Position numbers and translations under genes: made by a program
Assembly: GCA_035084275.1 (NCBI GenBank)
Contig: CM068769.1
Span: 1,612,146-1,676,000 of the forward strand
Origin: Hydrolagus colliei
Lineage: Eukaryota
Length of the DNA: 63,855 nt
Direction: 5' to 3'
Part shown: positions 5,156 to 49,107 of the stretch, one piece after another
Numbering within the stretch: the stretch's first letter is position 1
Layout of the letters: each line of letters opens with the position of its first letter
Notes under the pieces: generated by a model
Database searches by the model: none
The model's input: only the letters and a program-made list of their open reading frames with translations
What the model was told of the DNA's origin: nothing

Positions 5156-5156
5156 A

Positions 5157-5320: not shown

Positions 5321-5936
5321 CACACACAGACTGGGAGAGAGAGAGACACACACACACACAGACTGAGAGAGAGACACACACACAGACTGGGAGAGAGACA
5401 CACACAAAGACTGGGAGGGAGAGAGAAACACAAACACACACACAGACTGGGAGAGCGAGAGACACACACACAGAGACGGGAAGAGCGACACACACACAGA
5501 CTGGCAGAGTAAGACACACACACGCAGACTGGGAGAGAGAGACATGCACACACAGACTGGGAGAGAGAGAGACACACAGACTGACTGAGAGAGCGAGAGA
5601 GACACACACACGCAGACTGGGAGAGAGACACACACACGCAGATTGGGAGAGAGACACACACACAGACTGGGAGGTAGAGAGAGACACACACACAGACTGG
5701 GAGAGAGAGACACACACACACAGTCTGGGAGAGAGAGACACACACAGACGAAGAGAAAGACACGCACACACACAGACTGGGAGAGAGAGAAACACGCACA
5801 CACACAGACTGGGAGAGAGAGACACACACACACACACACACAAACACACAAACAAACAGAGACTGGCAGGGAGAGAGACACACACACACAGAGACTGGGA
5901 GAGAGAGAAAGACATGCACACACACGGACTTCTAGT

Positions 5937-8900: not shown

Positions 8901-9024
8901 CTCTGCTGTGTGCACTTCTTAATCTCATGCTGCACAGAGACATCTGTGAGTCTCGGGGGACAGAAGGGACACATAGAGGACAGCCTAGACATGTCCTCTA
9001 TGTTTCACTCTCGCCGCCATTTTT
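5937..9024 (-). mobile_element. L2-type (CR1 clade) LINE, apparently near full length but frameshifted
   Basis: RT fragments (HSTETAL...DLSAAFDTVDH, GVPQGSVLGPLLF, YADDTQLY) in ORFs 6112-6921, 6876-7202 and 7070-7621. Endonuclease-like frames lie at ~7600-8400. A (TTG)n tail is at 5937, and the 5' end has AAAATGGCGGCG at ~9012-9024. Confidence 0.88.
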
Positions 9025-12000
9025 AAAAGCTGCAGCATCATGCCAGTTTGCCAAATAATGTACCAAGGATCACTGTAGCCTGAGAAGTTTATTGACTCTG
9101 AATTTCTCCGGTACAAGAACAATAAAACACATGTAATCCATAATACTGCGAAATTTACCGATATCGCAAACAGTAAAATAATGGCTTTCCTTTGGTTCTT
9201 CATCTCTGGATCATTGTCTCCCTCACCTCTATTCCTGTCCCCATCACTGTGTCCCCGCAATCTCCTGCGGGCTCGACTGGCCACCAGGATGTGCCTGACA
9301 GCCAGGGGGTTGAGCAGCAAAATCCCAACGAATGGGAGATTTGGGGTTAAAACAAGGTCGAGGTGGTCAAACACATTCCATGGGATAAACGAGTAAACGC
9401 TTGCTTTGGTCACGCAAATCCACGATATGCTGTTAAATATGAACTCTGGTTCATAGTCAAAGTACGAGGGAATATTTACCCCAATGAAGAACAAACTGAA
9501 CCCCGCTATCACTGCAGCAGCTGTTTTTGCGGTGCAATATTTAGTTTTCAGTTGTTGGCAGCAGATAGCGACATATCGATCGAAGGCTAAAGCCACGGTT
9601 AGCCAGACAGAGATTGCCAATGGTGCAGTACTCAGTGCCTCTAGCAACGAGCAAACATGGGTGATGTTCACGAATGAATATGGGAAGTAGAAAGGAACAA
9701 TGCGATAGAAAATCACCACAAAAATTACCATCATCACATCAGGCACTGACATGGCCAGCAGATAGTGGGAGACACATTTTGAAAGACCGCACCTCCCTCG
9801 GGACAGGATCAGAATGGCTACCATGTTAGCTGCAGAGAGAGTGAAGGTAAAATGACCAGTTATAATAATCCATTTGTACAGTTCATCTTCTGCTGTTAAA
9901 GTAATATTTTCTGCTGCGCTTTCTGTTGGGTACTTTTCGCTTCTCTCACGTGAAGTCACTATTTTTGCGACATCAAAGTGCGATGGAGAGAAGTCTGGCT
10001 CGCTGCCCATCGCCAGCAGTCACATTCACACGCACATACAGAGACAGAAAAAGATGCACAGACAGCGGGAAATGCACTGACATGAAGACAGGGGAAGAGA
10101 GCAAGAAACAAAGACGGAACACACAGGACGATGTAGAGAAAAGTAAATTCAGGCAGAAATGCAGAAATACACTTTTCTGTATATCGGCAGAAAGATCTCT
10201 ACCCGTTCTGAGAGAGAGAGACCGTCACAGACAAAGGGGGAATGGGAGATACAGAGATACAACTACACAGAGAGTTAAACACAGACACAATGAGTTTGGT
10301 ACAGAGATACAACAAGACAGATAGATGCACTCAGACTGATAGATGGAGGGTTATTCAAAGACAGAGGGAGAGAATCACTGATACAAAGAGAAATGCACAG
10401 AGACAGATTCAGATAGATATATATGCACACAAGCAGCGAGAGCGACACATCGCCTAAATACACGTACACAAACATACAGATGAATTAGACAGATATGCAC
10501 ACAGAGAGATAAAATTACATACAAGGTGAGAAAGATTCACCGACAAATAGAGGCAATTCCACACACAGGGAATGGTAGTAAATATTTGAAGCAGATGTGG
10601 ATGTAGATCGATACATAGATAGACACACACACGCAACTAGAGAATGGGAACATAGAGGGGGGGGGGGGGCAGAGAGAAACAGAAGAACAGCCACATGCAG
10701 AGAGATATACAAAGAAGTACAGAATGAGACAGGGAGACAGATATAGGTCTTGTGGGGTCAGTCTAGAACGAGACACATGTAAAAACGTTTCACCTGCACA
10801 GCAGTAAACAAACCAAACTAAGACTTCCATGAATGTCAACATGTTAATCCCATAGATAGATTGTTGGAAAATAATGCAGACAAAAGCTATCTCTGCCTAT
10901 GTCTGCTGATCTATTTGTCCATGCGTAGCTCTTCCTCTCTCCCCCCCTCTCTCTCACCAAAGCTGGTGGTGTTCATGTCCGTATTTCAATATATAGCTCT
11001 ATTTCTGTATCACTGCAAATCTCCCTCTCACTGCCTGTGGGCAATATGCTTTACTTGCATATTCTTATGGATGGCGATATGATTCCTCAAGGACTCAAGT
11101 CCCCCAGCTGACCAAACTAAATCTATATAAACAGTTATGTGTGGAGTAAAGAAACTTGCCTTATGTTTCCCAATACTTCATAATGATACCCGGTCCACCG
11201 GCTTGAAAGTTCAATGCTGTAGTAAGGGAGAGAGGGGAATACGGATAGCGGAAAGATAGCTCAGAAGATACGTGGAGAAGGGGATTGATATCAATGGAAA
11301 GAGAGAGGGACACACATACATAGAGAAATAGGTACTCACAGTCACATATAGAGCGAGAGAGATAGACACAGATCAATAGATGAAGAGACAGCGAGATGTA
11401 AACAGGTAAAAATGTTGACATACAATGTGCAATAAACACGGTCAGAGAGCATGTAGCACGCAGTTTTGGACAATGCCGCAGGATTCTGGATCCTCAGCAG
11501 CCTGGGGAGGGAGTAATTGGGAAGACCGTCCAACAGAGTATTTGCATTGCCGAGCCGGAAAGTAATGAAGACATGAATGAGGCTATCAGCGGCTTTGAAG
11601 TGGTGCGTTATTGGCGGAGTCAGGCAATGTGGGTTAGATGAGGAAAGTAGGTGGGTGGCATTGCTTGGACGTGATGGAGGCAAGACACATGAGTGTCGAA
11701 CAAGACAACAACGTATCTGAGTGGCTTGATGAGGTCAAGTGAGCAACGATGGAGGTTGACACTGCCAGCGACGGATGCTTCAAGACGCTGGCGAGAGCCA
11801 ATCAACAGTGAATGTATAGAAAGAGCTAGAGAATAACAGAGAGATGAACGGATGCACTGAGACAGCGAGAGTGCTAACCAATCAGAAAGAAACAGAGAGA
11901 TAGACACGGAGAGAAATGGACACAAAGAGGCACAATTACATAGATATACAGAGAAAGAAAGAGAAAGATGCAAACACACAGAGATAATAATATTCAATCT

Positions 12001-14294: not shown

Positions 14295-17200
14295 TCATAG
14301 AATGATAGAATCACAGACTTTTACGGCACAAAAGGAGGCCATTCGGCCCATCTAGTCTGTGCCGGCTCTTTGAAAAGAGCGATTCAATCCCACTGCCCTG
14401 CCCGCTCCCCATAGCCTAATAGACCCGTTCTCCCTAAGTAAAGATCTAATTCCCTTTTAAAAGTTGTTATCTAATCAGCCTCCACCACCCTTTCAGGCAA
14501 TGCATTCCAGATTCGAACAACTCGTTGAGTGAAAAAAGTTCTCCTCAGCTCCCCTCTACTGCGACTTGAAACTATTTTAAATCTGTGACCATGAGTCACA
14601 GATTCACCCACGAGTGGAAATAGTTTTTCTCTATTTGCCCTGTAGAAACCCCTCATGATCTTATAAACCTCTATTAGGTCTCCCCTCAATCTTCTCTGCT
14701 CCAGAGAGAATAACCCTAGCCTATCTAGCCTCTCCTCATAGCTGAAGTCCCTCAATCCTGGCACCATCCTAGTAAATCTTCGTTGTACCCTTTCCAATGC
14801 CTTCACATCCTTTCTGTAGTGTGGTGACAAGAATTGAACACAGTATTCCAGCTGAGGCCTCACCAAAGTCCTATAGAGGTTAGTCAGCACTTCCTGACTT
14901 TTGTACTCTATACCCCTATTAATAAAGCCTAGTATCCCATATGCCTTCTTAACAGCCTTGTCTACCTGTCCTGCCACCTTCAACGAGTCACTAACACAAA
15001 TCCCCAGGTCTCTCTGTTCCTTTACACCATTTAAAATTGTTCTATTTAGCCTATATTGCCTCCCTTCATTTCTTCTCCCAAAATGCATCACCTCACACTT
15101 CTCTGCATTAAACTTCATCTGCCATATGTCTGCCCACTTTACCAATTTGTCTATATCCTCTTGCAGATGGCTACTATCCTCCTCACTGTTTACTATTCTC
15201 CCTAACTTATTGTCATCTGCAAACTTGGAAACTGTACTCCGTACACCCAAGTCCAGATCATTGATGTAGATTACAAACAGCAATGGTCCCAAAACCGATC
15301 CCTGTGGCGCACCACTTCTCACTTCCCTCCAATCTGAAAAACAGCCGCTCACTACAACTCTCTGCTTTCTGTCTCGCAGCCAGTTGTGGATCCACGCTGC
15401 CACTGTCCCTTTTACGCCATGGGCCTTTAGTTTCATAATAAGTCTCTAATGTGGCACTTTGTCAAATGCCTTTTGAAAGTCCAAAAGGCATTTTGGACTT
15501 ACATCAACTGCGCTACCATTATCCACTCATTCCGTTACCTCATCAAAAAATTCTATCAGATTTGTAAGGCAAGATTTACCTTTAACAAATCCATGTTGAC
15601 TGTCCTTTATTAGCCTATATCTTTCTAAGTGAAGATCTACCTTGTCCCTGATTATGGACTATAGATGTTTGCCCACTACCGACGTTAGACTGACTGGTCT
15701 GTAGTTAACAGGCTTGTCCTTCTGCCGCTTTTTATACAAGGGAGTAACATTAGCTATCCTCCAGTCCTCTGGCACGACCCCTGTGTCCAAGGAAGATTGA
15801 AAGATAGTGGCCAGAGTCCCTGCTATTTGCTCCCGTGCCTCACTTAGTAACCTAGGGTGCATCCCATCCGGACCAGGTGACTTATCCACCTTGAGCGACG
15901 TCAACCGTTTTAGCACTTCCTCTCTGGTTATAATTATTCTATCCATTTATCCTACCCTCTCCTCTAATACGATGACATTGGCTGTATCATTTTCTTTTGT
16001 GAAGACAGAGGCGAAGTACTCATTCAGTACATCAATCATGCCCTCTGCCTCCACAATGAGATTTCCTCCTAGGTCCCTAATTGGCCCCACCCTCTCCTTG
16101 ACCAACCTTTTACTCTTAATATGTTGGTAAAAAAACCTTAGAGTTCCTCTTAATCTTACTCGCTAATTGTTTTTCATGCAGTCTCTTTGCCCCCCTAACT
16201 TCCTTTTTTAGTTCTATCCTACACTTCCTATATTCTGCTTTGTTCCCTTCTGAATTTTGAGCCTGACACTTATCATAAGCCTCTTTTTTTTGTTTTATTT
16301 TGGCCCCGATTTCCTTAGTCATCCAGGGAGGTTTGGATGCCTTACATTTCACCTTTGTGGGGATGCTTTTGACCTGTGCCTGAACTATCTCCTCTTTGAA
16401 CGCTGCCCACTGCTCGTTAGTTGTCTTACCTGCCAATTTTTCTTTCCAATCCACCTTGGCTAGGTCCCACCTCAACTCATTGAAATTAGCCCTTTTCCAG
16501 TTGAGTGGCCTCACCTGTGATCGTTCCTTATCCCTTTCCATAATTATTCTGAAACTAACGATATTGTGGTCACTATTCCCTAGATGCTTACCTACAGAAA
16601 CCTGTTGAACTTGCCCTACCTCATTTCCCAAAACTAGATCCAGCAATGCTTCTTTCCTCGTTGGACTGGAAACATACTGATCAAGAAAGTTGTCCTGCAC
16701 ACACTTCAGGAATTCTTCTCCCCCCTTGCCCTTTACTCTACTATTCTGCCAGTCTATGTTGGGATAGTTGAAGTCACCCATTATCACTACTCTATTAGTT
16801 CTGCATTTCTCCGTGATATGCTTGCAGATCTGCTTGTCTATCTCCTCCCCACTATTTGGTGGTCTATAGTATAACCCTAACAGTGTAACTGCACCTTTTG
16901 TATTCCTAATTTCTAACCAGATAGATTCGGTTTTTAGTCCTTCTTCCACCTCGTTCCTTTCTAAGGCAGTCACTGAGTCCTTAACTAAAATTGCCACCCC
17001 GCCCCCTTTTCTCCCTTCTCTATCCCTCCTGAATACATTATAACCAGGAATGTTCAACTCCCATTCCTGCCCATGCTGGAGCCAAGTCTCTGTTACTGCT
17101 ATAACATAATTTCGCCTCGCAGCAACCTGAGCCTGCAGCTCACCAATTTTATTTCTCAAACATCGTGCATTTACATACATGCACTCTGAGGCACAAATTA

Positions 17201-26380: not shown

Positions 26381-26722
26381 TTCTCTCTCCCATAAATACA
26401 CAGTAAAATCACTTGACAATGTATTCTGTGAAGCGCTTTGAATCGCTTAGAGTAGACGTGAAAAGCGATATAGCGGATGCAAGTATTATTATCATTACTG
26501 CTGTTATTATCCACATGTCTTAATTCTAAAAAAACATGTATCACAATCTTCTATCGGTTGATTAATAAACACATATAATACAGAGATAGTGATGCATTTC
26601 TTTTTCTTTAATTGTCTTGATATGAAGTAAATAAAGTGTAAGCTGTGGGGACAGTTAGCTGATGGTTTGTTACATGGTGTCTCACTGCTCTTTACTGATT
26701 CCCAGCGTTTGGTTGTGATGAG

Positions 26723-26761
26723 AGTTATTGTACGAGGCTTCCTATGATGTGTATCACTGTG
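26723..26761 (-). other. 23-RSS of the supporting V
   Basis: CACAGTG-23 bp-ACAATAACT. Confidence 0.9.
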
Positions 26762-27057
26762 GTGCTGACTGACTACACAGTGATACATAGCGGAGTCTGG
26801 TAGCTGCAGCCTGGCGATGGTTAAATGGCTGATTTTTTTGGCAGTGTCAAGAGAAGCAGAAATATGATCTCCAGTGGGGTTTCCTCCCTCTCCCAAAGGG
26901 CTTCTGTGGCGAAGGTATATCGGTGCCTCACCAGGGAACTGCCAGTACCAGGAGACAATTAAATTCTGTCCACAGAATCCGGAGTAATGGCATTGTAAAT
27001 CCACTCTCTCTCCAGCAATAGCCTTTATTTCAGGCGGTGACTGAGTAATTATCGATC
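26762..27057 (-). CDS. Leaderless supporting TCR-delta-type V exon of the NAR-TCR cassette (extra Cys in CDR1)
   Basis: Acceptor cgtag|GA TCG ATA (phase 1), then SIITQSPP...LQCHYSGFCGQNLIVSWYWQ...DSAMYHCVVSQH. No leader was found. The upstream phase-1 donor is the J at 29322. Confidence 0.9.
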
Positions 27058-28419
27058 CTACGTGGAGGATATCACAGCATAGTGAGCATTGCAATGTCGT
27101 AGCATTGTACAGCAATGAAGCAGAACATTAGGAGAATTGTTTATATGCCAGCTGTTTGGGGCAATTGTCCAACTTTTCCCACTCCCATTGTTGCCCCATA
27201 TTCTCGACACATTTTGCTTCTGCATTACTCCACCTGTCCATTTCCACTTTAAAATGGATTGTTTAACATGCTTATACAAGAATATCAGGGAGCGCGTTGC
27301 AGATTATCATAACTTTGAAATTTATAACAAATTCTCTTGTTCTCCCGTTTGTTTCTTTTTTAAAAAAAACTTTAAAACACATGTCCTTTGATTACTGGCC
27401 AATGGAAACAGTTTCTATGCTCCACTTTTATCAGATACTATTTTAACATTCATTGCGCTCAAGATAAATTGATCTCTTTGTATATGTCAATTGCTACTTT
27501 GCTGTAACCATTCTATTAAATCGTCTTTCAATAATGTCCAAGACTTTAATATCCTTATTACCCTGAGAATCAAAGACACTTTAGAACCACTTTTCATCTA
27601 AACCATACAGTTACTCTAATAATAATACTTGCATTTGTTATAGCGCTTTTCATGTCCTCTAGCCGCCTCAAAAACCTTCAAAGAATATACTGTAAAGTGA
27701 TTTGACTATTCGTGAGTGGACGAAGCGCGGCACCCGAACAATAATAATACTATTATTACTGTTTTACTATAGGCGCTTTTCGCAACTTATCGACGTCACA
27801 AAGCGCTTCACAGAATACACTGTAAATTGGAATGATTCTATATTTGTGGGACAAACGCGGCAGCGAATTGCGCACAGCAGTGTTCCTCACAAACAGTCGT
27901 GGATTGGATTGACCAATGTATATTATTGTGGGATTTTTTCACGGATTGTTATTAGACGTGTGGAGAAAGGTAACTTGCCCAAGGTTTAGCTCTAATCTTC
28001 CTGGATTCGAACACGGGTCTCACGCTTGTAAGTGATTGTGATATCCACTGAGCAAAAATCCACAATAAAATAGTTTTACTCATTCTATACGGGTTTGCTG
28101 TTGTAGATTGCTCCCACTGAAGCCCTGGTTGTCTGTGATCATGGGAATGTTTAGCAGAGAATCAGATGTCGGTGTGCACAGTTAGCTCCGTTGAATTAAA
28201 GTTGAGTGAAATGGAATTCCCCTCTCTGAATGTCGTGACATTGACATCGCTGCTGGAGGAGGTGAATGAAGTCTCTGGCTTGTTTCCAAAATCAGTTTTG
28301 TCTCAGCCTGTTAGCCTCTAAATGCAGTTTCATTTGTGCCAGAAGAAAACTGCTTTCCATAAAAAAGTGTTAAATAATTGCTTAAATATTTTTCTTTCTT
28401 TGTTAGTTTATTTGTTTAT

Positions 28420-28690
28420 TTCCGTGTTTCTTTCCGTCTTTCTTTCCGTGTTTCTTTCCGTGTTTCTTTCCGTGTTGCTTTCCGTGTTTCTTACCTTCCG
28501 TTCCTTCCCGTCCATCCCGTCCTTCCCGTCCTTCCCGTCCTTCCCTCCCTTCCCTCCCTTCCCTCCCTTCCTTCCCTTCCTTCCCTTCCCTTCCTTCCTT
28601 CCTTCCTTCCTTCCTTCCTTCCTTCCTTCCTTATTCTCTCTCTCCAACTCTATCCAATCTATCTCTCCCCCTTTCCCCTTCCTCTCTCTA
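28420..28690. repeat. Polypyrimidine/polypurine simple-repeat gradient in the J-to-supporting-V intron
   Basis: (ccgtgtttcttt)n grading into (ccttcccgt)n, (ccttccct)n and (cctt)n. Confidence 0.95.
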
Positions 28691-29321
28691 ATGTACCTTA
28701 GATGCTTCCTACACGTGTATTTGCTTACATTTTGGCAAAATACCGTGTTTTCGTGTGAATGAATAGTTAGTTGCTTGTTTCTGTAGAACATGATATAGTT
28801 CAGTTGGAACACTCAACTTCCATACAGAGGGGAAATTGGTGAACATTTCAAGTTATCGACCTCGCTTCAGACAAGCCTTGGTTTGAATAGAGCAATTTAT
28901 AGCATGTTTCATGTTGGAGACATTTCATTGAGAGTTGACTTCTCGATGGAATCGAGGCAGAGAGTGTACATAATATGCCACTGGAACTCACGTATCCTGC
29001 GTCAATCATTTGTCTGAATTTACAGATAAATTCTGTAATTTATCTGTAAATGTATCTAGGCATGTTCCTTTGTAAACCATCTCCAGAAAAAGTGCAATGG
29101 CATAAAACCAAAAATGGAGTTGATGCAGTTCATCTTAGCGGGAGCTGTCTAGTCTTTTAAAATCACACGCATATCTTTTATTTTTCAAAAGGCGGTCAAG
29201 TGGTATGTTGGCATGACACGTTTGAAAATAACTAGGCAATTTGTTAAAATTAAGCAGTGCATTTTAGAAATTCAAGTAACAAATGTTTCGTTTTATTTCG
29301 GTAGAATTTATTCTCACTTAC

Positions 29322-29377
29322 TTTCTGTTACTGTGACTTTGGTTCCTGATCCATCTAAGGTATATTCCGCCCAAGGA
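29322..29377 (-). CDS. NAR-type J segment
   Basis: Reads (P)WAEYTLDGSGTKVTVTE + A|gtaagt. The DGxG motif resembles the IgNAR J DGAGT. A+GA gives Arg, in frame with the exon at 27057. Confidence 0.92.
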
Positions 29378-29416
29378 CACAGTAACACAGCTCTCGTAAT
29401 ACAAGGCGCAAAATAT
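29378..29416 (+). other. 23-RSS 5' of the J segment
   Basis: CACAGTA-23 bp-GCAAAATAT read on the + strand. Confidence 0.8.
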
Positions 29417-29759
29417 ATTCTATCTGATTATGATTGAATACTGCCACGAAGTAAAAATAAATGGAAACAAGTTAGTTGTTAGTTTGTACATTTCTACCAC
29501 TTTGTCATCAAAATAAATGCATCGTGTCCAAATTTGGTTTAATTTCAATGTAATTTCCACCCATTACGAATAAATTGCCTCGCCCAGAAAACATATATCA
29601 GTAAATAAATCTAGAGTTGTCTGCTTCAAATGGCTAATTCAGAAAGCAAACGTCTGACAAATACAGCGCAATAAAACATGGAACAGCAATTAGTGTTGAT
29701 GTGCAATGTAATTCCACATAAACAGCCGCACGGTATTTGTGCTGATGGATTCCAATGTG

Positions 29760-29776
29760 GCTTTCCAAATGGCCAG
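29760..29776 (-). other. D segment (17 nt, CTGGCCATTTGGAAAGC) flanked by 12/12 RSS
   Basis: 3' RSS CACATTG-12-ACAAATACC (29759-29732) and 5' RSS CACAGTA-12-ACAAATATA (29777-29804). All three frames are open (LAIWK / WPFGK / GHLES). Confidence 0.9.
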
Positions 29777-30129
29777 CACAGTATTTGCTGTCAACACAAA
29801 TATAGTATTTTGCAAAAACAGTGTAACACTATCTGGTCAAGTACAATTTATCAATAAATAAGATCACGTGTACAAATATTTTGAAGATATTCCTATTCAG
29901 ATTTGATATGTCGTCTATTCGATATACATAAACTGCGATATATGCCACTTGCACTCACATTCAACGTTTTTTAACACTACCTACATTTTCCTCAGTGTTC
30001 ACCAATAATGCTTGTCAGTCGAAGAGAGTGTTCATAAACACCATTCACATCTCAACACAATGGAAAATGTGCATTGAATTAATTGACAAAGTCAGATTGA
30101 CTGTGTGTTGTCTTTGAATTGACGAGGAG

Positions 30130-30167
30130 GCTTTTTGTATTGTTGGAAGCCTAGATGCAGCATTGTG
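30130..30167 (-). other. 22-bp-spacer RSS of the NAR-like V
   Basis: CACAATG-22 bp-ACAAAAAGC. Confidence 0.9.
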
Positions 30168-30872
30168 TTGTCCCACAGATAATGAGAAGTACATCTGTAG
30201 GTAGCGCTGTCTGCTACTTGCAAATCATTACTTTCCAGCGTGGATGTCTTTGTTCCCACTTTGATAACATCAAACCGTCTTTCGCGATGGATGGACATCC
30301 AATCTCGTCCATTTGGAAACTGCCTTTGAAATGCCAAGCTAATGGATCTGTAGTTCCCACGATTCCCTTCTGCAAAGACGCAGTTGATGGTCAAAGAATC
30401 ACATTCTTCTTTGGTAATAGAAGTTGGTGTCTGTGTTAGGGTCTGACTGAAAACATCTGAAACATGCACAACATGACATCAGGTTAATAGAGGCACAACC
30501 CTGACCTGTACCATTAGCAGCAAATCCTGATGCTTGGCATGAGTTGAATTGATTTCAATTAATACAATAATGATATAATTATACTATCATGTTTAATTAA
30601 TAAAATACAAGCAGAACAGATTAATCGATAGCAATCGGCTGCTTCTTTTCGCCCGCAAAATAAAAAACAAGTACGGTCACTTCGTCATACAATATACACT
30701 GTGAAGCGCTTTAAGACGTTTCATCGATGTGACAAGCCTCTGTATCAAAGCAAGCAATAATGTAAATTATTGTAAGGCACAGGGTAACGATGGTATTCTC
30801 TCGTGCCGTGTAATTGGAACAAAACTCACGTTGTAAGAAGTGGAAGGCGATGGAGACAGAGATGAGATGCAT
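30168..30872 (-). CDS. IgNAR-like V gene (NAR-TCR V). Leader 30872-30830, V exon 30456-30168.
   Basis: Leader MHLISVSIAFHFLQ + gtgag. The V reads TQTPTSITKEECDSLTINCV...NDLQVADSATYRC, matching VNAR (DQTPQTITKETGESLTINCV...NDLTVEDSGTYRC). Position 41 to C104 spans 47 aa versus 60 in V1, so CDR2 is deleted. Confidence 0.92.
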
Positions 30873-33360
30873 TCTTTACTCGCTGGACAACTGAATGACT
30901 GTGTGTAACACAGGGATGTTCTGCAGCAGCTTTAGAGACTAAATTATACTTGTGTAGACTCTTTCCCGTCAGGAGAATCACATTAGCGTGTGACGTGATG
31001 GCCGGTGATAGTGGAATTGGGGTTGGAGGAGGGCGGGGCGAGAAACTATTTAAGGAAAGGGAGTGACAAACTGTGTAAGTGAGCAGGGGGCAGAAGGGGA
31101 TGATTTGGGGGTTGATTGTTGAACAAAATGGGCAATTGGCGAGGGCAGTGATAGGAAAGTAAGTGAAGAGACGTCCAGAGGGTAAACGGCGGCGTGATGC
31201 AGAGAGGGCTTTTGTTGTGAGTTGGTAAAGACAAATTAGCAACGACAGCAACAAAATTAGATTGATCGAGCGCTCTTCACGTCGGGAAGAGGTCACAATG
31301 CGCTGTACATCGAGGTCGGGACCAGCGAATTAGGGCAAAGTATCAGTGTACTTGTTAGCGGAAGATGAGTAGGAATCAGTGGGAGTGAGGAGGGGGAGTT
31401 GGAGTGAGTTGGGACGGGAGGGAGAGCGTCATGTGGCTTATGAGAGAGTTGGAAGAATTGGGAGAGACTTGGGAAGTGAAGGAGAGAGTTGGCAGCGGAG
31501 GGAGAGAGTTTGCAGGAAGAGAGATTTGGAAATGAAGGAGAGAATTGAGACGATGAGAGACTTGGAGGGAGAAGAAGAAAGTTGGGAGCGGAAGAAGAGT
31601 GTTGGGCGGGATGGGAGAGAGTTGTGAGTGGGAGGGAAATAATTGGGAGGGGAGATAGCAGGGATGGGAGGGAATTGGGAGGGGAGGTAGAGAATTATGA
31701 AGCAGGCAGAGAGTAGGGCATGGAGGCAGAGAGTTGGGAGGGGAGAGGAAGATATTTGGGAGGGGAGGGGGATTGTTTGCAGGGGAGCGCGAAAGAGTTG
31801 AGAGGGCAGATGATGTGTGAGGAGGTGAAACTAGAAACTAGGGTAAAGGCATTGTGTGTGCGTACAGTGGCTGGAGTCGTATATGGGAGAGAGAGCAATG
31901 GAGGGCTGCAGTGGGACACAGTGAAAGAAGATTTTGCAGCGCATGGATCAATTGAAACGTTTCAAAACTTCTCAGCTGCTGTACCAAGTTAGACCGTTTG
32001 TAGCATAAATATTTATATTAAATCTCGGCCAGTCCATCTCTCTGCCTAAGTCTCTGTCTTTCAAATGGAGGGCAGTTGTGGAGAAAATTGTTTACTGATT
32101 TACCTAGCTGCAATTAGGAACCGGCTTATTTGTCGTTTGTCCAGTGGCTTTGGACGGTAAAAAGCGTCTTCAAAATAATATTAATAATTGCGTGATCGCT
32201 GATTCCACGATTGAGTGTTGGACTTCGATGTTCATAATAGTCGGCAAATTTTGTCCACCAAACACACAACAACAACTTATATTCATGTAGCGCCATTCAA
32301 GCCGGATGGCGTCTCAGAGCGCTTCAGAATAAAGGTGTAAGTCAAGGACAGCGGGAGAAAGGTGACCGAATGTGACACATTCAATACTCTTGTAAACTGT
32401 CAAGCGCTTGGAGACCTATCGATCAAGTAATCAGCTGGAATATAAAACGTCAGCATTAGGACTATCATGTTGTTTATCCTAACAGAGTGTAATCCACTTT
32501 CCAACTGGCATTTGTATTAAGTATGGGGATGGTTGAGGGGATGTGAGCAGGAGACGATCCCTTGTGGACATAGACGTTTCACATCATTTTTGGTTTCATG
32601 ATGAAGAGTGAGGAGAATGCAGTTTGCGGCTTTTTGTGTGAAAGTGGTGATATTATCGATCATTCTGGAGAAAATTTATTGATGATACTCATAATAACCA
32701 TTGGATGTCATATTGTGATTTATCACCTACTCGAGACGCCTCCAAGCGCTTCACAGAAAGTGCAGTATAACGGAGTGACTTTGTGTTTTGGGGGTGAAAC
32801 ATTTTGCAATGATTCACTGCAGCATCTCACGGACAGCAGTATATGGAATAATCAAGTTCTTGGATAATATATATTGATTGCATTTTTTGAGCAAATTATT
32901 ATTTCATTTATTTTCATTGAAATATTTATTCATTTTTGTTAAATTCTTACTTAATTATTTAGAATTATTGTTGTGTTTTGGTTCACATACACATATTATT
33001 TATTAGTTCATGTATTTTTTTCACGTCTGTCTTAAATTATATTTTTATTTATGAAACAATGACTTTGTTTCTGTGCTTATTCGCCTGATTCGTTTGTTCG
33101 CTTGTTTACTTTTCCAAGGATAATTTCCAGTGGAACATGACTAGCCAATCGACAAACACCGGGTTCCTATTTACTGTTTAGTAAAGAAAGGCACGTGTCA
33201 TGAAGAAACTTTCTCTAGGTTGCGTCTAGCCTGTGAATCAAACGCAGGACCTCTCGCTTGTGAGATAGGACCTCTCGCCATCAAATTAGAGCACCCCACA
33301 TTATTTGTTAGATGGCGGCATCTAGTGATGGTTCAGGAGAATGACAGCGAATGGTTTGAG

Positions 33361-36300
33361 TTCATAGATTCATAGAATTTTACGGCACAAAATGAGGCCA
33401 TTCGGCCCATCTAGTCTGTGCCGGCTCTTTGAAAAGAGCGATTTAATCCAACTGCCCTGCCCGCTCCCCATAGCCTAATAGACCTGTTCTCCCTAAATAA
33501 GAATCTAATTCCCTTTTAAAAGTAGTTATCGAATCAGTCTACACCACCTTTTCAGGCAATGCATTCCAGATTCGAACAACTCGCTGAGTGAAAAAAATTA
33601 TCCTCAGCTCCCCTCTACTTCGCCTTGAAACTATTTGAAATCTCGCCCAGGAGAGGAAATCGTTTTTCTCTATTTGCCCTGTCGAAACCCCTCATGAGTT
33701 TATAAACCTCTATTAGGTCTCCCCTCAATCTTCTCTGCTCCAGAGAGAATAACCCTAGCCTATCTAGCCTCTCCTCATAGCTGAAGTCCCTCAATCCTGG
33801 CACCATCCTAGTAAATCTTCTTTGTACCCTTTCCAATGTCTTCACATTCTTTCTGTAATGTGGTGACCAGAATTGAACACAGTATTCCAGCTGAGGCCTC
33901 ACCAAAGTCTTATAGAGGTTAGTCAACAGTTCCTGACATTTGTACTCTATACCCCTATTTATAAAGCCTAGAATCCCATATGCCTTCGTAACAGCCTTGT
34001 CTACCTGTCCATCAACGAGTCACTAACACAAATCCCCAGGTCTTTCTGTTCCTTCACACCATTTAAAATTTTACTATCTAGCCATCTCAGGGATCGTCCG
34101 GGCGGGCGGCGAGGACAGGGAGTGGTTGCTGGACGATTGTTGGACGACTGTTGGTTATTGTTTGACGCTGTTTTTGTTGTTAATATTATTGCTTTTGTTG
34201 TTTATTATTGTTTATTGATGTTGTTTGATTCCCCCACCCCTGCCCCCATCTTCTTCTTCCCTCACTCCCTTTCCCCACTTTCTCTCCTCCCTTCTCCCCT
34301 TCCCTCCCTCTTCCCTCTTCCTGACCTTGCCCCCACCCATCTTTCCCTCCCTCTCTTCCTTGCCCCCCTTTCTCCCCCCTCTTTCTCCCTAACCCTAACC
34401 CATCGCACCTTTCCCTCCCTCTCCGCACTTACCCTCTTTTCCCCCTTTCTCCCCTGGCCCCATTTTCGCGATTGTTTGTAGGGACACTGCTGTGCGCAAT
34501 TTGGCTGCCGCGTTTCCCCCACAAGTATACAGTCGACTTTCCTGCCTTTCTTCCCCCTGCCTCGACCCCTCCCCTTTTGCTTCTTTACCCCCTTTTGCCC
34601 CTAGTCCCAGTTCCGTGACTGATTGTGGGACACTGCTGTGCGCAATTTGGCTGCCGCGTTTCGCCCACTAATATACAGTTACTTTTCCTACTATTCTTCA
34701 TCCTGCCCTGATCCCTCCCACCCTGCTCTTGTCTTACCTGAATGTACAGCGCCTTTGGATGTCCACTCGACGTGAAAGGCGCTATATAAATGTAAGTTTT
34801 GTTGTTGTTATATTTCCTCCCTTCATTTCTTCTCTCAAAATGCATCACCTCACACTTGTCTGCATTAAACTTCATCTGCCATGTGTTTACCACACTTTAC
34901 CAATTTGTCTATATCCTCTTGCGGACGGCTACTAAGCTCCTCACTATTTACTATTCTCCCTAACTTAGTGTCATCTGCAAACTTGGAAACTGTACTCCGT
35001 ACACCCAAGTCCAGATCATTGATGTAGATTACAAACAGCAATGGTCCCAAAACTGATCCCTGTTGCACGCCACTGCTCACTTCCCTCCAGTCTGAAAAAC
35101 AGCCGCTCACTACAACTCTCTGCGTTCTGTCTCGCAGCCAGTTGTGGATCCACGCTGCCACTGTCCCTTTTACGGCATGGGCCTTTAATTTCCTAATAAG
35201 TCTCTCATGTGGCACTTTGTAAAATGCCTTTTGAAAGTCCATGTAAACTACATCAACTGCGCTACCATTATCCACCCATTGCGTTAGCTCATCAAAAAAT
35301 TCTATCAGATTTGTAAGGCAAGATTTGCCTTTAACAAATCCATGTTGACTGTCCTTTATTAGCCTATATCGTTCTAAGTGAAGATCTACCTTGTTCCTGA
35401 TTGTGGACTCTAGAAGTTTGCCCACTACCGACGTTAGACTGACTGGTCTGTAGTTACCAGGCTTGTCCTTCTGCCCCTTTTTATACAAGGGAGTAACATT
35501 AGCTATCCTCCAGTCCTCTGGCACGACCCCTGTGTCCAAGGAAGATTGAAAGATCGTGGCCAGAGTCCCTCCTATTTGCTCCCGTGCCTCCCTTAGTAAC
35601 CTAGTTTGCATCCCATCCGGACCAGGTGACTTATCCACCTTGAGCGACGTCAAACTTTTTAGAACTTCCTCTCTGGGTATAATTATTCTATCCATTTCTC
35701 CTATCCTCTCCTCCAATACCATGGCATTGGCTGTATCCTTTTATTTTATGAAGACAGAAGCGAAGTACTCATTCAGTACATCAGCCATGCCCTCTGCCTC
35801 CACAATGAGATTTCCTCCTAGGTCCCTAATTGGCCCCACCCTATCCTTGACCAACCTTTTTCTCTTAGTATGTTGGTAAAAAACCTTAGGGTTCCCCTCA
35901 ATCATACTCGCTAATTGTTTTTCATGCAGTCTCTTTGCTCCTCTAACTTCCTTTTTTAGTTCTATCCTACACTTCCTATATTCTGCTTGGTTCCCTTCCG
36001 AATTTTGAGCCTGACACTTATCATAAGTGTTTTTTGTTGTTTTATTTTGGCCCCGATTTCCGCAGTCATCCAGGGAGGTTTGGATGCCTTACATTTCACG
36101 TTTGTGGGGATGCTTTTGACCTGTGCCTGAACTATCTCCTCTTTGAACGCTGCCCACTGCTCGTTAGTTGTCTTACCTGCCAATTTTTCTTTCCAATCCA
36201 CCTTGGCTAGGTCTCACCTCAACTCATTGAAATTAGCCGTTTTCCAGTTGAGTGTCCTCACCTGTGATCGTTCTGTATCCCTTTCCATAATTATTCTGAA

Positions 36301-37590
36301 TCTAACGATATTGTGGTCACTATTCCCTAGATGCTACAGAAACCTGTTGAACTTGCCCTACCTCATTTCCCAAAACTAGATCTAGCAATACTTCTTTCCT
36401 CGTTGGACTGGAAACATACTGATCAAGAAAGTTGTCCTGCACACACTTCAGGAATTCTTCTCCCTCCTTGCCCTTTACTCTACTATTCTGCCAGTCTATG
36501 TTGGGATAGTTGAAGTCACCCATTATCACTACTCTATTAGCTCTGCATTTCTCCGTGATATGCTTGCAGATCTGCTTGTCTATCTCCTCCACACTATTTG
36601 GTGGTCTATAGTATACTCCTAACAGTGTAACTGCACCTTTTTTATTCCTCATTTCTAACCAGATATACTCGGTTTTTAGTCCTTTTTCCACCTCGTTCCT
36701 TTCTAAGGCAGTCACTGAGTCCTTAACTAAAATTGCTTCCCCGCCCGCTTTTCTCCCTTCTATATCCCTGCTGAATACATTATAACCAGGAATGTTCAAC
36801 TCCCATTCCTACCCATGCTGGAGTCAAGTCTCTGTTACTGCTATAACATCATATCGCCTCGCAGCAACCTGAGCCTGCAGCTCACCAATTTTATTTCTCA
36901 AACTGCGTGCATTTACATACATGCACTCTAAGGCACAAATTATTTCCTCTGCACTGTTCTCCCGTCTTACCCTTACCCCTGTCCTCTTTGTTCCCCTCCC
37001 GTGTCTGAACAACTCATCAGTTTCCCACCCTCACCCCCCGGGATTAGTTTAAAGCCCCCCACACAAAACTCGACAACCTCACTGCAAGGAGATTGGTTCC
37101 AGCCCTGTTCAGGTGTAACCCATCCATTTTGTACAGGTTCCAACTACCCCAGAATTGGCCTTGGTGGAGTGTCAGGCTCTAGGATGAAACTATCTAAGAA
37201 GCTCTCCCCTTCCCTGATGCACCACAATGTCTCCACCTGATACTCCAGCTCAGCTATTCTAAGATGGAGCTTCCTCAAGTGCAGACATTTGCTGCAGATG
37301 AAGTCACCTTGGCTCTGGTTGCCCTCCATCAACTCCCACATCCCGCATTCCCCGCACATCACATGCCAGGCCATTATCTCGACGTACTTCCCTTGGATAT
37401 ATATAATCTGCACCTACTTCCTCCTCTGCACCTAATTCCCACTCTCACCCAATTCCTTCTCACTCTGTCCTCGCCTCACTCTCTCACCCAATTCCTTCTC
37501 ACTCTGTCCTCGCCTCACTCTCTCACCCAATTCCTTCTCACTCTGTCCTCGCCTCACTCCGCCCGTAGCTCGCTCTGGCTCTCTGCTCGA
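33361..37590 (-). mobile_element. CR1 LINE copy 2 with 5' UTR, internal ORF1 deletion and a nested SINE-derived insertion (~34083-34808)
   Basis: RT 34865-35722 and 33615-33926, endonuclease 35962-36799, ORF1 zinc-finger/zipper (CGECGMW...CSKC...LRIAELEYQV) 37144-37413, three 39-bp tandem repeats 37444-37559, and tail at 33361. Confidence 0.93.
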
Positions 37591-47579: not shown

Positions 47580-49107
47580 GTTACTAAGTGAGGCACGGTA
47601 GCAAATAGCAGGGACTCTGGCCACGATCTTTCAATCTTCCTTGGACACAGGGGTCGTGCCAGATGCCAGCAGGATAGCTAATGTTACTCCCTTGTACAAA
47701 ATGGGGCAGAAGGACAAGCCAGATAAGTACAGACCAGTCAGTCTAACGTCGGTAGTGGACAAACTTCCAGAGTCCATAATCAGGGACAAGGTAGATCTTC
47801 ACTCAGAAAGATATAGGCTAATAAAGGACAGTCAACATGGATTTGTTAAATGCAAATCTTGCCTTACAAATCTGATAGAATTTTTTGATGAGGTAACGGA
47901 ATGGGTCGATAATGGTGGCGCAGTTGATGTAGTTTACATGGACTTTCAAAAGGCATTTGACAAAGTGCCACATGAGACACTTATTATGAAATTAAAGGCC
48001 TATGGCGTAAAAGGGACAGTGGCAGCGTGGATCCACAACTGGCTGCGAGACAGAAAGCAGAGAGTTGTAGTGAGCGGCTGTTTTTCAGATTGGAGGGAAG
48101 TGAGCAGTGGTGTGTCACAGGGATCAGTTTTGCGACCATTGCTGTTTGTAATCTGCATCAATGATCTGGACTTGGGTGTACGGAGTACAGTTTCCAAGTT
48201 TGCAGATGACACTAAGTTAGGGAGAATAGTAAATAGTGAGGAGGATAGTAGCCATCTGCAAGAGGATATAGACAAATTGGTAAAGTGGGCAGACACATGG
48301 CAGATGAAGTTTAATGCAGAGAAGTGTGAGGTGATGCATTTTGGGAGAACAAATGAAGGGAGGCAATATAGGCTATATAGTACAATTTTAAATGGTGTGA
48401 AGGAACTGGGGATTTGTGTTAGTGACTCGTTGAAGGTGGCAGGACAGGTAGACAAGGCTGTTAAGAAGGCTTATGGGATACTCGGCTATATAAATAGGGG
48501 TATAGAGTACAAAAGTCAGGAAATGCTGACTAACCTCTATAAGACTTTGGTGAGGCCTCAGCTGGAATACTGTGTTCAATTCTGGTCACCACACTACAGA
48601 AAGGATGTGAAGGCATTGGAAAGGGTACAACGAAGATTTACTAGGATGGTGCCAGGATTGAGGGACTTCAGCTATGAGGAGAGGCTAGATAGGCTAGGGT
48701 TATTCTCTCTGGAGCAGTGAAGATTGAGGGGAGACCTAATAGAGGTTTATAAGATCATGAGCGGTTTCGACAGGGCAAATAGAGAAAAACTATTTCCACT
48801 CGTGGGTGAATCTGTGACTCGTGGTCACGGATTTAAAATAGTTTCAAGGCGAAGTAGAGGGGAGCTGAGGAGAAGTTTTTTTCACTCAGAGAGTTGTTCG
48901 AATCTGGAATGCATTGCCTGAAAAGGTGGTGGAGGCTGATTCGATAACAACTTTTAAAAGGGAATTAGATCTTTATTTAGGGAGAACAGATCTATTGGGC
49001 TATGGGGAGCGGGCAGGGCAGTGGGATTGAATCGCTCTTTGCAAAGAGCCGGCACAGACTCCTTTTGTGCCGTAAAATTCTATGAATCTATGAAACTATG
49101 AATCTAT
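47580..49107 (+). mobile_element. CR1 LINE copy 3 (5'-truncated RT and 3' tail)
   Basis: ORF 47641-48720 (YMDFQKAFDKV, FADDTKL), premature TGA at 48718-48720, and (ctatgaat)n tail. Confidence 0.95.

What the first reader, a model, noticed from the sequence alone, without database searches (positions are those of the whole stretch)
26723..30872. Complete doubly-rearranging NAR-TCR cassette (antibody-like V-D-J spliced onto a leaderless TCR V)
Seen in sequence: leader, a CDR2-less VNAR-like V with 22-RSS, a 12/12 D ~390 bp away, a DGSG J with 23-RSS ~380 bp further, a phase-1 donor that is in frame with a leaderless V 2.3 kb downstream, and a 23-RSS on that V. Established knowledge: this is the architecture of shark NAR-TCR, a delta chain with two V domains made by two RAG events. 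The class is therefore known, but the ORF track shows neither the D, the J nor the leader, so this copy is probably unannotated. Inference: every element looks functional.
Basis: partly seen in the sequence, partly recalled or inferred. Interest (0 to 1): 0.9.

Follow-up and report, generated by a model that had tools for sequence, protein, structure and literature searches.

The report
Germline NAR-TCR delta-chain gene cassette
This is an intact-looking germline copy of the shark/chimaera "NAR-TCR" gene unit, in which a small antibody-like V-D-J cluster is spliced onto a leaderless T-cell-receptor V segment; the kind has been known since 2006, so this is a new copy rather than a new system.

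Summary
The cassette runs as follows:
- a 43-nt phase-1 leader;
- a 289-nt NAR-type V exon with a 22-spacer RSS;
- a 17-nt D flanked by two 12-RSSs, 384 bp further on;
- a ...DGSGTKVTVTE J with a 23-RSS, 375 bp after that;
- a phase-1 GTAAGT donor and a 2264-nt intron;
- a leaderless 296-nt V exon with a 23-RSS.

The interpretation as NAR-TCR is supported.
- The first V sits inside the NAR-TCR V clade, sister to IgNAR V. It carries both published hallmarks: a Cys in the a-b loop and Phe in place of the WYRK Trp.
- The second V sits inside the NAR-associated delta-V clade, has the CDR1 Cys, and has no usable leader.
- Six elasmobranch germline loci fetched here show the same layout, RSS spacers and spacing.

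The nearest relatives are elephant-shark (Callorhinchus milii) proteins at 50-73% identity. The source is therefore probably a holocephalan, likely not C. milii itself.

Function is inferred, not shown. All reading frames, splice sites and RSSs are usable, but the J nonamer and the D 5' nonamer are weak. No constant-region gene lies in the window.

The kind is already known from nurse shark (2006) and elephant shark (2007). Interest is modest. One side observation is that the ~380-bp V-D and D-J spacing is conserved without sequence similarity.

The parts
30943..30948 (-). TATAAT, a possible TATA-like promoter element 76 nt upstream of the ATG (untested)
   Evidence: No Ig octamer lies within 300 nt. 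This rests on sequence alone and is weak.
30830..30872 (-). Leader exon: MHLISVSIAFHFLQ plus 1 nt, 43 nt, phase 1, donor GTGAGT at 30829
   Evidence: It is homologous to the C. milii leaders MSLLCVSISFLFLQ and MSLLGVSISFLFLQ. The bamboo-shark leader exon in L001 is also 43 nt and phase 1.
30168..30456 (-). NAR-TCR-type V exon, 289 nt. It has a Cys in the a-b loop (KEEC), Phe in place of Trp41 (LAFQRQ), a short CDR2 region, and ends ...DSATYRCTSHYLWD
30130..30167 (-). V RSS: CACAATG, 22-nt spacer, ACAAAAAGC
   Evidence: A 22-nt spacer occurs in 6 of the 7 cassettes compared.
29777..29804 (-). D 5' 12-RSS: nonamer TATATTTGT, 12-nt spacer, heptamer TACTGTG
   Evidence: The nonamer matches 6 of 9 bases, so this is the weaker of the two D RSSs.
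29760..29776 (-). D segment CTGGCCATTTGGAAAGC, 17 nt, open in all three frames
   Evidence: The D segments of the six elasmobranch cassettes are 15-17 nt.
29732..29759 (-). D 3' 12-RSS: CACATTG, 12-nt spacer, ACAAATACC
   Evidence: It is the only 12-RSS with at most 2 mismatches in bases 6001-63855. The same NCAAATACC nonamer occurs in 6 of 7 cassettes.
29378..29416 (-). J 23-RSS: nonamer ATATTTTGC, 23-nt spacer, heptamer TACTGTG
   Evidence: The nonamer matches 5 of 9 bases, making this the weakest RSS of the set.
29322..29377 (-). J segment PWAEYTLDGSGTKVTVTE, 56 nt, phase-1 donor GTAAGT at 29321
   Evidence: Compare C. milii EYTADGSPTKVTVTK and the shark ..DGSGTVVTVTA.
27058..29321 (-). Intron of 2264 nt between J and the supporting V. 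It holds a GGAA microsatellite and SINE-like repeats but no leader exon
26762..27057 (-). Leaderless supporting TCR delta-type V exon, 296 nt, acceptor cacgtag, Cys in CDR1 (SGFCGQ), ending ...DSAMYHCVVSQH
26723..26761 (-). Supporting-V RSS: CACAGTG, 23-nt spacer, ACAATAACT
   Evidence: Its read-through translation HHSDTHHRKPRTITLITTK is identical in four C. milii supporting-V protein models.

Best explanation
This is a germline, unrearranged NAR-TCR cassette inside a TCR alpha/delta V-gene cluster of a cartilaginous fish, most likely a holocephalan.

Inferred mechanism, taken from the described family:
1. In thymocytes, RAG carries out two independent rearrangements on one chromosome.
2. The first is within the ~1.1-kb mini-cluster. 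The NAR V (22/23-RSS) joins the single D (12/12), which joins the NAR J (23-RSS). The 12/23 rule makes the D obligatory.
3. The second joins the leaderless supporting V (23-RSS) to D-delta and J-delta segments that lie downstream, outside the window.
4. Transcription starts upstream of the only leader.
5. Splicing joins the leader to the NAR VDJ exon, the phase-1 J donor to the supporting V(D)J exon, and J-delta to C-delta.
6. The product is a three-domain delta chain (NAR V, delta V, C delta) that pairs with TCR gamma.
7. Its N-terminal NAR V is unpaired and binds antigen as a single domain. It is probably tied to the supporting V by a disulfide between the a-b-loop Cys and the CDR1 Cys.

Shown here: the anatomy, reading frames, splice phases, RSS types, family membership of both V domains, and conservation of the layout in six other species.

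Inferred: actual rearrangement, expression, pairing and the disulfide.
For: Anatomy and frames:
-.

Family of the first V:
- PDB hits are VNAR.
- The nearest proteins are chondrichthyan proteins with a NAR V followed by a supporting V. One of them, Mustelus P0008, continues into a constant region whose best PDB matches are human TCR delta constant at E 9e-11.

Tree:
- NAR V lies in the NAR-TCR clade (93/88), in a holocephalan subclade (94/90).
- IgNAR V forms a separate clade (99/94*).
- The supporting V lies in the supporting-V clade (100/92*).

Hallmarks (criteria from PMC1845163):
- The a-b-loop Cys is present in 15 of 15 NAR-TCR V and 0 of 6 IgNAR V.
- Phe or Leu replaces Trp41 in 15 of 15 NAR-TCR V, whereas 6 of 6 IgNAR V keep Trp.
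- The CDR1 Cys is present in most supporting V and in 0 of 13 conventional V.

Leader:
- No leader-like exon with a usable phase-1 donor exists anywhere in the 2264-nt intron.

Comparison with six elasmobranch loci, L001-L006:
- All have a 22/23-RSS on V, a single 12/12 D, a 22/23-RSS on J and a phase-1 J donor.
- In five of the six the leaderless-V acceptor was located. In L003 it was not, and L004 has extra NAR VDJ exons before the supporting V.

Context:
- Conventional TCR V segments flank the cassette on the same strand.

Literature:
- NAR-TCR is a doubly rearranging delta chain found in all cartilaginous fish (PMC1845163, PMC3149040, PMC5931798, PMC12227049).
Against: - There are no expression or rearrangement data.
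- No D-delta, J-delta or C-delta lies in the window, so the delta identity is borrowed from homologues.
- The J nonamer (5 of 9) and the D 5' nonamer (6 of 9) are weak. The V heptamer (CACAATG) and the D 3' heptamer (CACATTG) each differ from consensus by one base.
- A second AG 10 nt inside the V exon could compete as an acceptor and would give a stop.
- The NAR V is only 49-50% identical to its nearest relatives and sits on a long end branch of 0.5.
- The Pfam V-set score of the NAR V is below the gathering threshold, 21.6 against 26 bits. The six IgNAR and fifteen NAR-TCR V domains were not scored against Pfam here, so it is not known whether this is typical of the family.
Confidence: 0.9

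Rival explanations
1. It is a structurally intact but unused copy, a young or cryptic pseudogene: the cassette is a true NAR-TCR relative but no longer rearranges or is not expressed.
For: - The J nonamer and the D 5' nonamer are weak.
- Three heptamers are non-consensus.
- A competing AG lies 10 nt inside the V exon.
- The NAR V has a long end branch and is at most 50% identical to the C. milii copies.
- Neighbouring V segments include probable pseudogenes, such as the V at 60463-60149, which lacks Cys23 and Trp41.
Against: - All five coding pieces are open and in phase.
- Both donors match GTRAGT 6 of 6.
- All family-specific residues are retained.
- CAC is kept in every heptamer.
- The D 3' RSS and both V RSSs are strong.
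Confidence: 0.12
2. It is an IgNAR heavy-chain V-D-J cluster (antibody gene) rather than a TCR element.
For: - The V is VNAR-like by PDB search.
- The RSS pattern (V 23, D 12/12, J 23) and the ~380-bp spacing are of the Ig-cluster type.
Against: - There is one D, whereas IgNAR has three (PMC4279169).
- The a-b-loop Cys and the Trp-to-Phe change are NAR-TCR marks absent from all six IgNAR V compared.
- The tree separates it from IgNAR V.
- The J donor leads in frame into a V exon, not a C exon.
- There are no Ig or TCR C exons in the window.
- TCR V segments flank it.
- IgNAR was not found in the elephant-shark survey assembly, which was incomplete (PMC1845163).
Confidence: 0.02
3. These are two unrelated neighbours: an orphan NAR V-D-J and an ordinary TCR V that has its own, unrecognised leader. 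The in-frame J donor would then be a coincidence.
For: The absence of a leader rests on a pattern search (ATG, 30-110 nt, phase-1 GT donor), which could miss an unusual leader.
Against: - The best leader candidates in the 2264-nt intron have donors matching only 3 of 6 and are not signal-peptide-like.
- The V has the CDR1 Cys and groups with NAR-associated V at 100/92*.
- The same J-donor-to-acceptor arrangement recurs in five other species.
- Gene models and proteins in seven species join the two V domains.
Confidence: 0.03

Closest known systems
NAR-TcR of nurse shark (Criscitiello, Saltis and Flajnik 2006, PNAS 103:5036). The paper itself is not held, so it is cited through PMC1845163, PMC5931798 and PMC12227049.
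   Same: - The delta-chain unit rearranges twice.
- The NAR V has a leader and its own D and J.
- The J is spliced to a leaderless delta V that rearranges separately.
- Extra Cys residues sit in the NAR V a-b loop and in the delta V CDR1.
- The NAR V lacks the WYRK Trp.
   Different: - It comes from a different lineage. The nearest relatives are holocephalan, and protein identity to shark copies is about 40%.
- The J ends ..TVTE and the junction codon is R, not the ..TVTA-D of sharks.
Elephant shark (Callorhinchus milii) NAR-TcRV and associated TcR delta V (Venkatesh et al. 2007, PMC1845163). Protein models: XP_007909367 and UniProt A0A4W3GFY2 among others.
   Same: - These are the closest sequences: NAR V 50%, supporting V 70-72%.
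- The leader is homologous.
- The motifs FPNxRDW and GEGGNPTGDHISASLDTAKKIS are shared.
- The read-through of the supporting-V RSS is identical.
   Different: - There is no identical or near-identical protein.
- The window's supporting V is sister to all seven C. milii copies, and a conventional V is also only 73% identical.
- So this is probably another holocephalan species, or a divergent copy that has not been predicted.
Germline NAR-TCR cassettes of Chiloscyllium plagiosum, Pristis pectinata, Scyliorhinus canicula, Heterodontus francisci, Mustelus asterias and Rhincodon typus (loci L001-L006, fetched here).
   Same: - The order of elements, the RSS spacer classes and the single 15-17-nt D are the same.
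- V-to-D is 373-385 bp and D-to-J is 363-385 bp.
- All have a phase-1 J donor. The leaderless-V acceptor was located in five of the six.
- The J-to-V intron is about 1.9-2.8 kb in four loci.
   Different: - There is no detectable non-coding sequence similarity to the window.
- The L-V intron is 373 nt here and 150 nt in L001.
- Heterodontus has extra germline-joined NAR VDJ exons.
IgNAR heavy-chain clusters of elasmobranchs
   Same: - The V domain is related, single and lacks most of CDR2.
- The mini-cluster layout is Ig-like.
- The J carries a DGxGT motif.
   Different: - IgNAR has three Ds, keeps Trp41 and lacks the a-b-loop Cys.
- Its J splices to Ig constant exons.
TCR mu of marsupials and monotremes
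   Same: The TCR chain has three extracellular domains, with an antibody-like unpaired N-terminal V on a supporting V (PMC3457774).
   Different: - It arose independently, from VH-related V genes.
- The supporting V is germline-joined in marsupials.
- It sits in its own locus.

Membership tests
NAR-TCR (N-terminal NAR-TcR V) | The V domain groups with NAR-TCR V, apart from IgNAR V and conventional TCR or Ig V. | tested here: met
   it lies inside the NAR-TCR V clade (93/88) and the holocephalan subclade (94/90). IgNAR V is a separate clade (99/94*).
NAR-TCR (N-terminal NAR-TcR V) | It has a typical leader peptide on a separate exon. | tested here: met
   a 43-nt phase-1 exon with a GTGAGT donor. 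It is homologous to C. milii leaders and has the same length and phase as in L001.
NAR-TCR (N-terminal NAR-TcR V) | Cysteine in the a-b loop (PMC1845163). | tested here: met
   KEEC is present. The Cys is in 15 of 15 NAR-TCR V and 0 of 6 IgNAR V.
NAR-TCR (N-terminal NAR-TcR V) | It lacks the canonical Trp of the WYRK motif (PMC1845163). | tested here: met
   LAFQRQ, with Phe aligned to the Trp. All 15 relatives have Phe or Leu, and all 6 IgNAR V have Trp.
NAR-TCR (cassette) | It has its own D and J with RSSs that permit V-D-J joining: V 23, D 12/12, J 23. | tested here: met
   The J nonamer and the D 5' nonamer are weak. The same pattern holds in six elasmobranch loci.
NAR-TCR (cassette) | The J ends in a splice donor that is in phase with the downstream V exon. 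| tested here: met
   a phase-1 GTAAGT donor. J plus V reads through without a stop. The same holds in five other loci.
NAR-TCR (supporting delta V) | It lacks a leader exon and begins with a splice acceptor. | tested here: met
   no ATG-to-phase-1-donor exon with a donor score of 4 or more out of 6 exists in the whole 2264-nt intron. As controls, leaders were found for two conventional V segments and for the NAR V. This is a pattern search, so it is not absolute.
NAR-TCR (supporting delta V) | Conserved Cys in CDR1 (PMC1845163). | tested here: met
   SGFCGQ is present. It is absent from all 13 conventional V segments compared.
NAR-TCR (supporting delta V) | It groups with NAR-associated delta V and carries a 23-RSS for joining to D-delta. 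| tested here: met
   (100/92*; holocephalan subclade 98/97*). CACAGTG, 23-nt spacer, ACAATAACT.
NAR-TCR (locus) | It lies within the TCR alpha/delta locus and uses C-delta. | tested here: inconclusive
   Conventional TCR-type V segments flank it on the same strand. No D-delta, J-delta or C exon is in the window. The constant region of the homologue P0008 matches human TCR delta constant best.
NAR-TCR (expression) | Transcripts of the form L-NARV-D-J-deltaV-D-J-Cdelta arise from two rearrangements. | not testable with these tools
   No RNA or lymphocyte DNA data are available.
IgNAR cluster | Three D segments, Trp41 kept, and the J spliced to IgNAR constant exons. | tested here: not met
   There is one D. 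Phe sits at the Trp position. The J leads into a V exon. There are no C exons.

The most novel reading that the evidence does not exclude
There are two modestly novel readings.

(a) The window may come from a holocephalan other than Callorhinchus. That would make it the first germline description of a NAR-TCR cassette in that branch, where a Southern blot on ratfish once suggested the family was absent (reported in PMC1845163).

(b) The intersegment distances inside the NAR mini-cluster are held almost constant between this cassette and six elasmobranch cassettes: V-to-D 373-385 bp and D-to-J 363-385 bp. No sequence similarity to the window is detectable, and the neighbouring introns vary 2- to 3-fold in length. 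This suggests a physical constraint on length for short-range RAG recombination, for example looping or roughly two nucleosome repeats.
Probability: 0.3. Interest if true: 0.5.

Novelty: new member of a known kind. Interest (0 to 1): 0.3.

Why it matters
NAR-TCR is the oldest known case of an antibody-like single-domain V mounted on a T-cell receptor, and it bears on how Ig and TCR loci exchanged V genes.

A complete, apparently intact germline cassette from a holocephalan-type genome adds a second deep branch to the comparison. It shows that the whole design predates the split between holocephalans and elasmobranchs. That design comprises one leader, Ig-style 23-12/12-23 RSS logic, a phase-1 J donor, a leaderless delta V and the paired extra cysteines.

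Practically, such cassettes are missed or misnamed by automatic annotation. Homologues are called 'immunoglobulin kappa light chain-like', 'T cell receptor alpha chain MC.7.G5-like' or 'uncharacterized'. Coordinates like these therefore help curation. It does not change what is known about the system.

Tried and rejected
- **Frameshift idea for the missing Trp.** Another frame of the V exon reads ..PLAWHFKGS.., which resembles WYRK. I rejected this for three reasons. That frame is closed by stops inside the exon. The main frame aligns colinearly with C. milii MEFYRKFPNERDW. All 15 NAR-TCR V relatives have Phe or Leu there, and this is a published hallmark (PMC1845163).
- **Word-indexed protein search with leader plus V.** It found nothing. 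The exhaustive HMMER scan was needed instead.
- **Primary paper and a 2021 review.** Criscitiello 2006 and Ott 2021 are not held, so I used secondary papers and direct locus comparison.
- **C. milii genomic loci.** None were obtainable, so there is no nucleotide-level comparison with the nearest species.
- **Second cassette or constant region in the window.** There is none.
- **Non-coding similarity to the bamboo-shark locus.** There is none.
- **tRNA-derived SINE in the intron.** ARAGORN found nothing.
- **Promoter motifs.** There is no Ig octamer, only a TATAAT at -76 and a CRE half-site at -124. Neither is conserved in L001 or L005.
- **The RSS-like site at 7662.** It lies next to a non-Ig open frame and is a chance match.
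- **Structure prediction.** I did not run it. The tool returns no coordinates, so the proposed interdomain disulfide could not be measured.

Full report
**1. The observation**

- Leader exon: 30872-30830, 43 nt, MHLISVSIAFHFLQ plus one base. Its donor is AAC|GTGAGT.
- L-V intron: 373 nt.
- First V exon: the acceptor tttcag opens an exon at 30456-30168. Joined to the leader it reads MHLISVSIAFHFLQHVFSQTLTQTPTSITKEECDSLTINCVFAEGNRGNYRSISLAFQRQFPNGRDWMSIHRERRFDVIKVGTKTSTLESNDLQVADSATYRCTSHYLWD.
- Alternative acceptor: a second AG ten bases further in would give a stop. The homologous first AG is the one used in C. milii models (..FLFLQYVFS..).
- V RSS: CACAATG, 22-nt spacer, ACAAAAAGC.
- D: a 17-nt segment (29776-29760, open in all frames) follows 384 bp later, between TATATTTGT-12-TACTGTG and CACATTG-12-ACAAATACC.
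- J: 375 bp after the D 3' heptamer comes ATATTTTGC-23-TACTGTG, then the J coding sequence PWAEYTLDGSGTKVTVTE (29377-29322). It ends with one extra base and the donor GTAAGT.
- Second V exon: after a 2264-nt intron, the acceptor cacgtag opens an exon at 27057-26762. J plus this exon translates without a stop and leaves no extra base.
- Second V RSS: CACAGTG-23-ACAATAACT (26761-26723).
- The only N run in the window is 5157-5320, far from the cassette. It was not touched.

**2. More than chance**

I scanned bases 6001-63855 with a consensus RSS scan and compared it with 200 first-order Markov simulations.

| RSS class | Mismatches allowed | Found on minus strand | Expected per strand |
|---|---|---|---|
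| 22/23-spacer | 2 or fewer | 7 | 0.03 |
| 12-spacer | 2 or fewer | 1 (the D 3' RSS) | 0.02 |

All seven 22/23-RSS sites abut Ig-like open frames. Two of them belong to the cassette and five to conventional V segments.

The D 5' RSS (4 mismatches) and the J RSS (5 mismatches) are not rare by themselves, at about 1 and about 6 chance sites per strand. Each, however, lies exactly at the required coding end.

**3. What the two V domains are**

*Pfam and PDB.* Pfam gives V-set for both domains. The score is weak for the first (21.6 bits, below the cut-off of 26) and clear for the second (42.3 bits). In the PDB, the 29 best matches of the first V are all shark VNAR domains, the best at E 4e-11. The second V matches generic V domains.

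*Protein collections.* An exhaustive HMMER scan of 1.84 billion representatives with the first V gave 28 hits. The best is Callorhinchus milii XP_007909367 (E 5e-27, 50% identity). After it come predicted proteins with a NAR-like V followed by a second V, from these species:
- Heterodontus francisci
- Pristis pectinata
- Chiloscyllium plagiosum
- Cetorhinus maximus
- Mustelus asterias
- Rhincodon typus
- Scyliorhinus canicula

True IgNAR chains scored lower.

*The delta identity.* The Mustelus protein (P0008) continues into a constant and transmembrane region. Its nine best PDB matches are human TCR delta chains, with E about 1e-10 against 1e-5 for the next class. The family is therefore a delta chain, as the literature states (PMC5931798, PMC12227049).

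*Tree.* I built an IQ-TREE tree of 54 V domains.
- The window's first V lies inside the NAR-TCR V clade (93/88), in a subclade with the C. milii copies (94/90). It is next to, but outside, the IgNAR V clade (99/94*).
- The second V lies inside the clade of NAR-associated supporting V (100/92*). Within it, it is sister to all seven C. milii supporting V (98/97* for the holocephalan group).
- Conventional TCR V segments from the window and from C. milii form other groups.

**4. Published hallmarks**

The elephant-shark survey paper (PMC1845163) states the criteria. NAR-TcR V has a typical leader, a Cys in the a-b loop, and lacks the Trp of WYRK. The associated delta V lacks a leader and has a conserved Cys in CDR1. 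All are met here.

| Hallmark | Window | Relatives |
|---|---|---|
| Cys in the a-b loop | KEEC | 15/15 NAR-TCR V; 0/6 IgNAR V |
| Trp of WYRK replaced | LAFQRQ (Phe) | 15/15 have Phe or Leu; 6/6 IgNAR V keep Trp |
| Cys in CDR1 of the supporting V | SGFCGQ | present in most supporting V; 0/13 conventional V |
| Short CDR2 region | 47 residues from the Trp41 position to Cys104 in the NAR V, 58 in the second V | not compared |

What first looked like a defect, the missing Trp, is thus a family mark.

*Leader search.* I searched the whole 2264-nt intron for an ATG exon of 30-110 nt ending in a phase-1 GT donor. It found only candidates with donors matching 3 of 6 and with non-signal-like peptides. 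The same search recovered the NAR leader and the leaders of two conventional V segments.

**5. Direct comparison with germline loci of other species**

Six loci were fetched through their predicted proteins and dissected.

| Locus | Species | V-to-D 5' heptamer (bp) | D 3'-to-J heptamer (bp) |
|---|---|---|---|
| window | unknown | 384 | 375 |
| L001 | Chiloscyllium plagiosum | 385 | 379 |
| L002 | Pristis pectinata | 384 | 385 |
| L003 | Scyliorhinus canicula | 377 | 363 |
| L004 | Heterodontus francisci | 373 | 380 |
| L005 | Mustelus asterias | 385 | 369 |
| L006 | Rhincodon typus | 376 | 369 |

Features shared across the cassettes:
- V with a 22- or 23-spacer RSS. The spacer is 22 nt in six of the seven cassettes, window included.
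- A single D of 15-17 nt with 12/12 RSSs.
- A J with a 22/23-RSS and the motif xGxGTxVT.
- A phase-1 G|GTAAxT donor. In five of the six loci a yag acceptor opens a V exon downstream. In four of them (L001, L002, L005, L006) that exon is the supporting V, 1.9-2.8 kb away. In L004 it opens the first germline-joined NAR VDJ exon, 770 nt away.
- The D 3' nonamer NCAAATACC in six of seven, window included.

In L003 the acceptor was not located; the supporting V lies about 4.6 kb downstream of the J.

The leader exon of L001 is 43 nt and phase 1, as in the window.

**6. Which organism**

The best identities are all to C. milii:
- 50% for the NAR V;
- 70-72% for the supporting V;
- 73% for a conventional V at 22624-22325.

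Both V types branch outside the C. milii paralogue groups. The source is therefore most likely a holocephalan other than C. milii. Genomes of such species exist (for example PMC12952989). A divergent, unpredicted C. milii copy cannot be excluded. No identical protein exists in the 5.8-billion-protein collection.

**7. Mechanism**

The RSS logic is that of an Ig heavy-chain cluster (V 23, D 12/12, J 23). NAR V cannot join NAR J directly, so the D is obligatory. The supporting V carries a 23-RSS, as TCR delta V segments do, for joining to the 12-RSS of a D-delta outside the window.

With one promoter and leader, two RAG events and three splices, the product is NAR V, delta V, C delta. By the current model it pairs with TCR gamma and leaves the NAR V unpaired as a single-domain binder (PMC3457774, PMC6795676). 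The two extra cysteines probably link the NAR V to the delta V (PMC1845163, figure legend).

These steps are inferred from the family. The window shows only that every sequence requirement is in place.

Caveats:
- the J nonamer (5 of 9) and the D 5' nonamer (6 of 9) are weak;
- three heptamers are one base off consensus;
- there is a nearby competing AG;
- there are no expression data.

**8. Surroundings**

- The cassette sits among conventional TCR-type V segments on the same strand. Their RSS heptamers are at 63381, 60146, 58522, 45097, 40539 and 22322.
- LINE fragments lie between them.
- No constant region is present.

**9. Verdict**

[quoted passage not shown] This is a new member of a known kind.

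Interest is modest at 0.3. The main added value is a fully resolved cassette of holocephalan type, plus the side observation that intersegment spacing is conserved without sequence similarity.

Noticed in passing
window 30167-29378 (-), compared with L001-L006: V-to-D (373-385 bp) and D-to-J (363-385 bp) distances are nearly constant in seven germline NAR-TCR cassettes. The L-V intron (373 against 150 nt) and the J-to-V intron (1.9 to about 4.6 kb) vary. The intersegment DNA aligns among elasmobranchs (z 4-37) but not between the window and any of them (z 4 or less). This suggests a constraint on length without a constraint on sequence.
   Followed up: partly
window 26723-26770 (-): The supporting-V RSS, spacer included, translates as HHSDTHHRKPRTITLITTK. 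That is identical to the read-through in four C. milii supporting-V protein models (P0001, P0030, P0032, P0033), although the V coding parts are only about 70% identical. The RSS and its spacer may be more conserved than the V. No nucleotide sequences were available to check this.
   Followed up: partly
L004 about 2850-3190 and about 3970-4320 (Heterodontus francisci CM071069.1): Two tandem NAR-type VDJ exons follow a normal rearranging NAR cassette. Both are leaderless and germline-joined: they have an acceptor, no RSS between V and J, the same CDR3 (AEYDGTGVDTRY), and end in a GTAAGT donor. One has an in-frame stop and the other is open. This resembles the germline-joined V of marsupial TCR mu.
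   Followed up: partly
window 1-5924 (+): A minisatellite of about 6 kb made of (AC)n(AG)n-type units with a period of about 30-32. It is interrupted by the N run at 5157-5320 and produces many spurious ORFs and RSS-like hits.
   Followed up: no
window 8985-10010 (-): An intact, intronless 341-aa ORF with a rhodopsin-family 7TM domain (Pfam 7tm_1, E 3.5e-16). Its nearest solved structure is GPR139, a weak match at E 4e-7. It lies downstream of the V segments.
   Followed up: partly
window 14471-17180 (-), 34865-36799 (-), 47641-48720 (+): LINE-type reverse-transcriptase and endonuclease ORF fragments lie between the V segments.
   Followed up: no
window, 14 sites including 30699-30712, 27800-27813 and 26426-26439: A dispersed short repeat containing AAAGCGCTTCACAG has 14 copies with at most 2 mismatches, against 0.5 expected. 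One copy is in each intron of the cassette and one lies just downstream of it. It is probably a SINE-like family. A GGAA/GGGAA microsatellite lies at about 28440-28640 in the J-to-V intron.
   Followed up: no
window 60463-60149 (-) and 63698-63384 (-): Two conventional V segments look impaired. The one at 60.1 kb lacks both the first canonical Cys (TIRMNVS) and Trp41. The one at 63.4 kb has Leu at the Trp41 position. Both still have good 22/23-RSSs.
   Followed up: no
proteins P0002-P0012: NAR-TCR-type gene models in public shark and ray genomes are named 'uncharacterized', 'immunoglobulin kappa light chain-like', 'immunoglobulin superfamily member 2-like' or 'T cell receptor alpha chain MC.7.G5-like'. 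Several are chimeric read-through models. The family is systematically misannotated.
   Followed up: no
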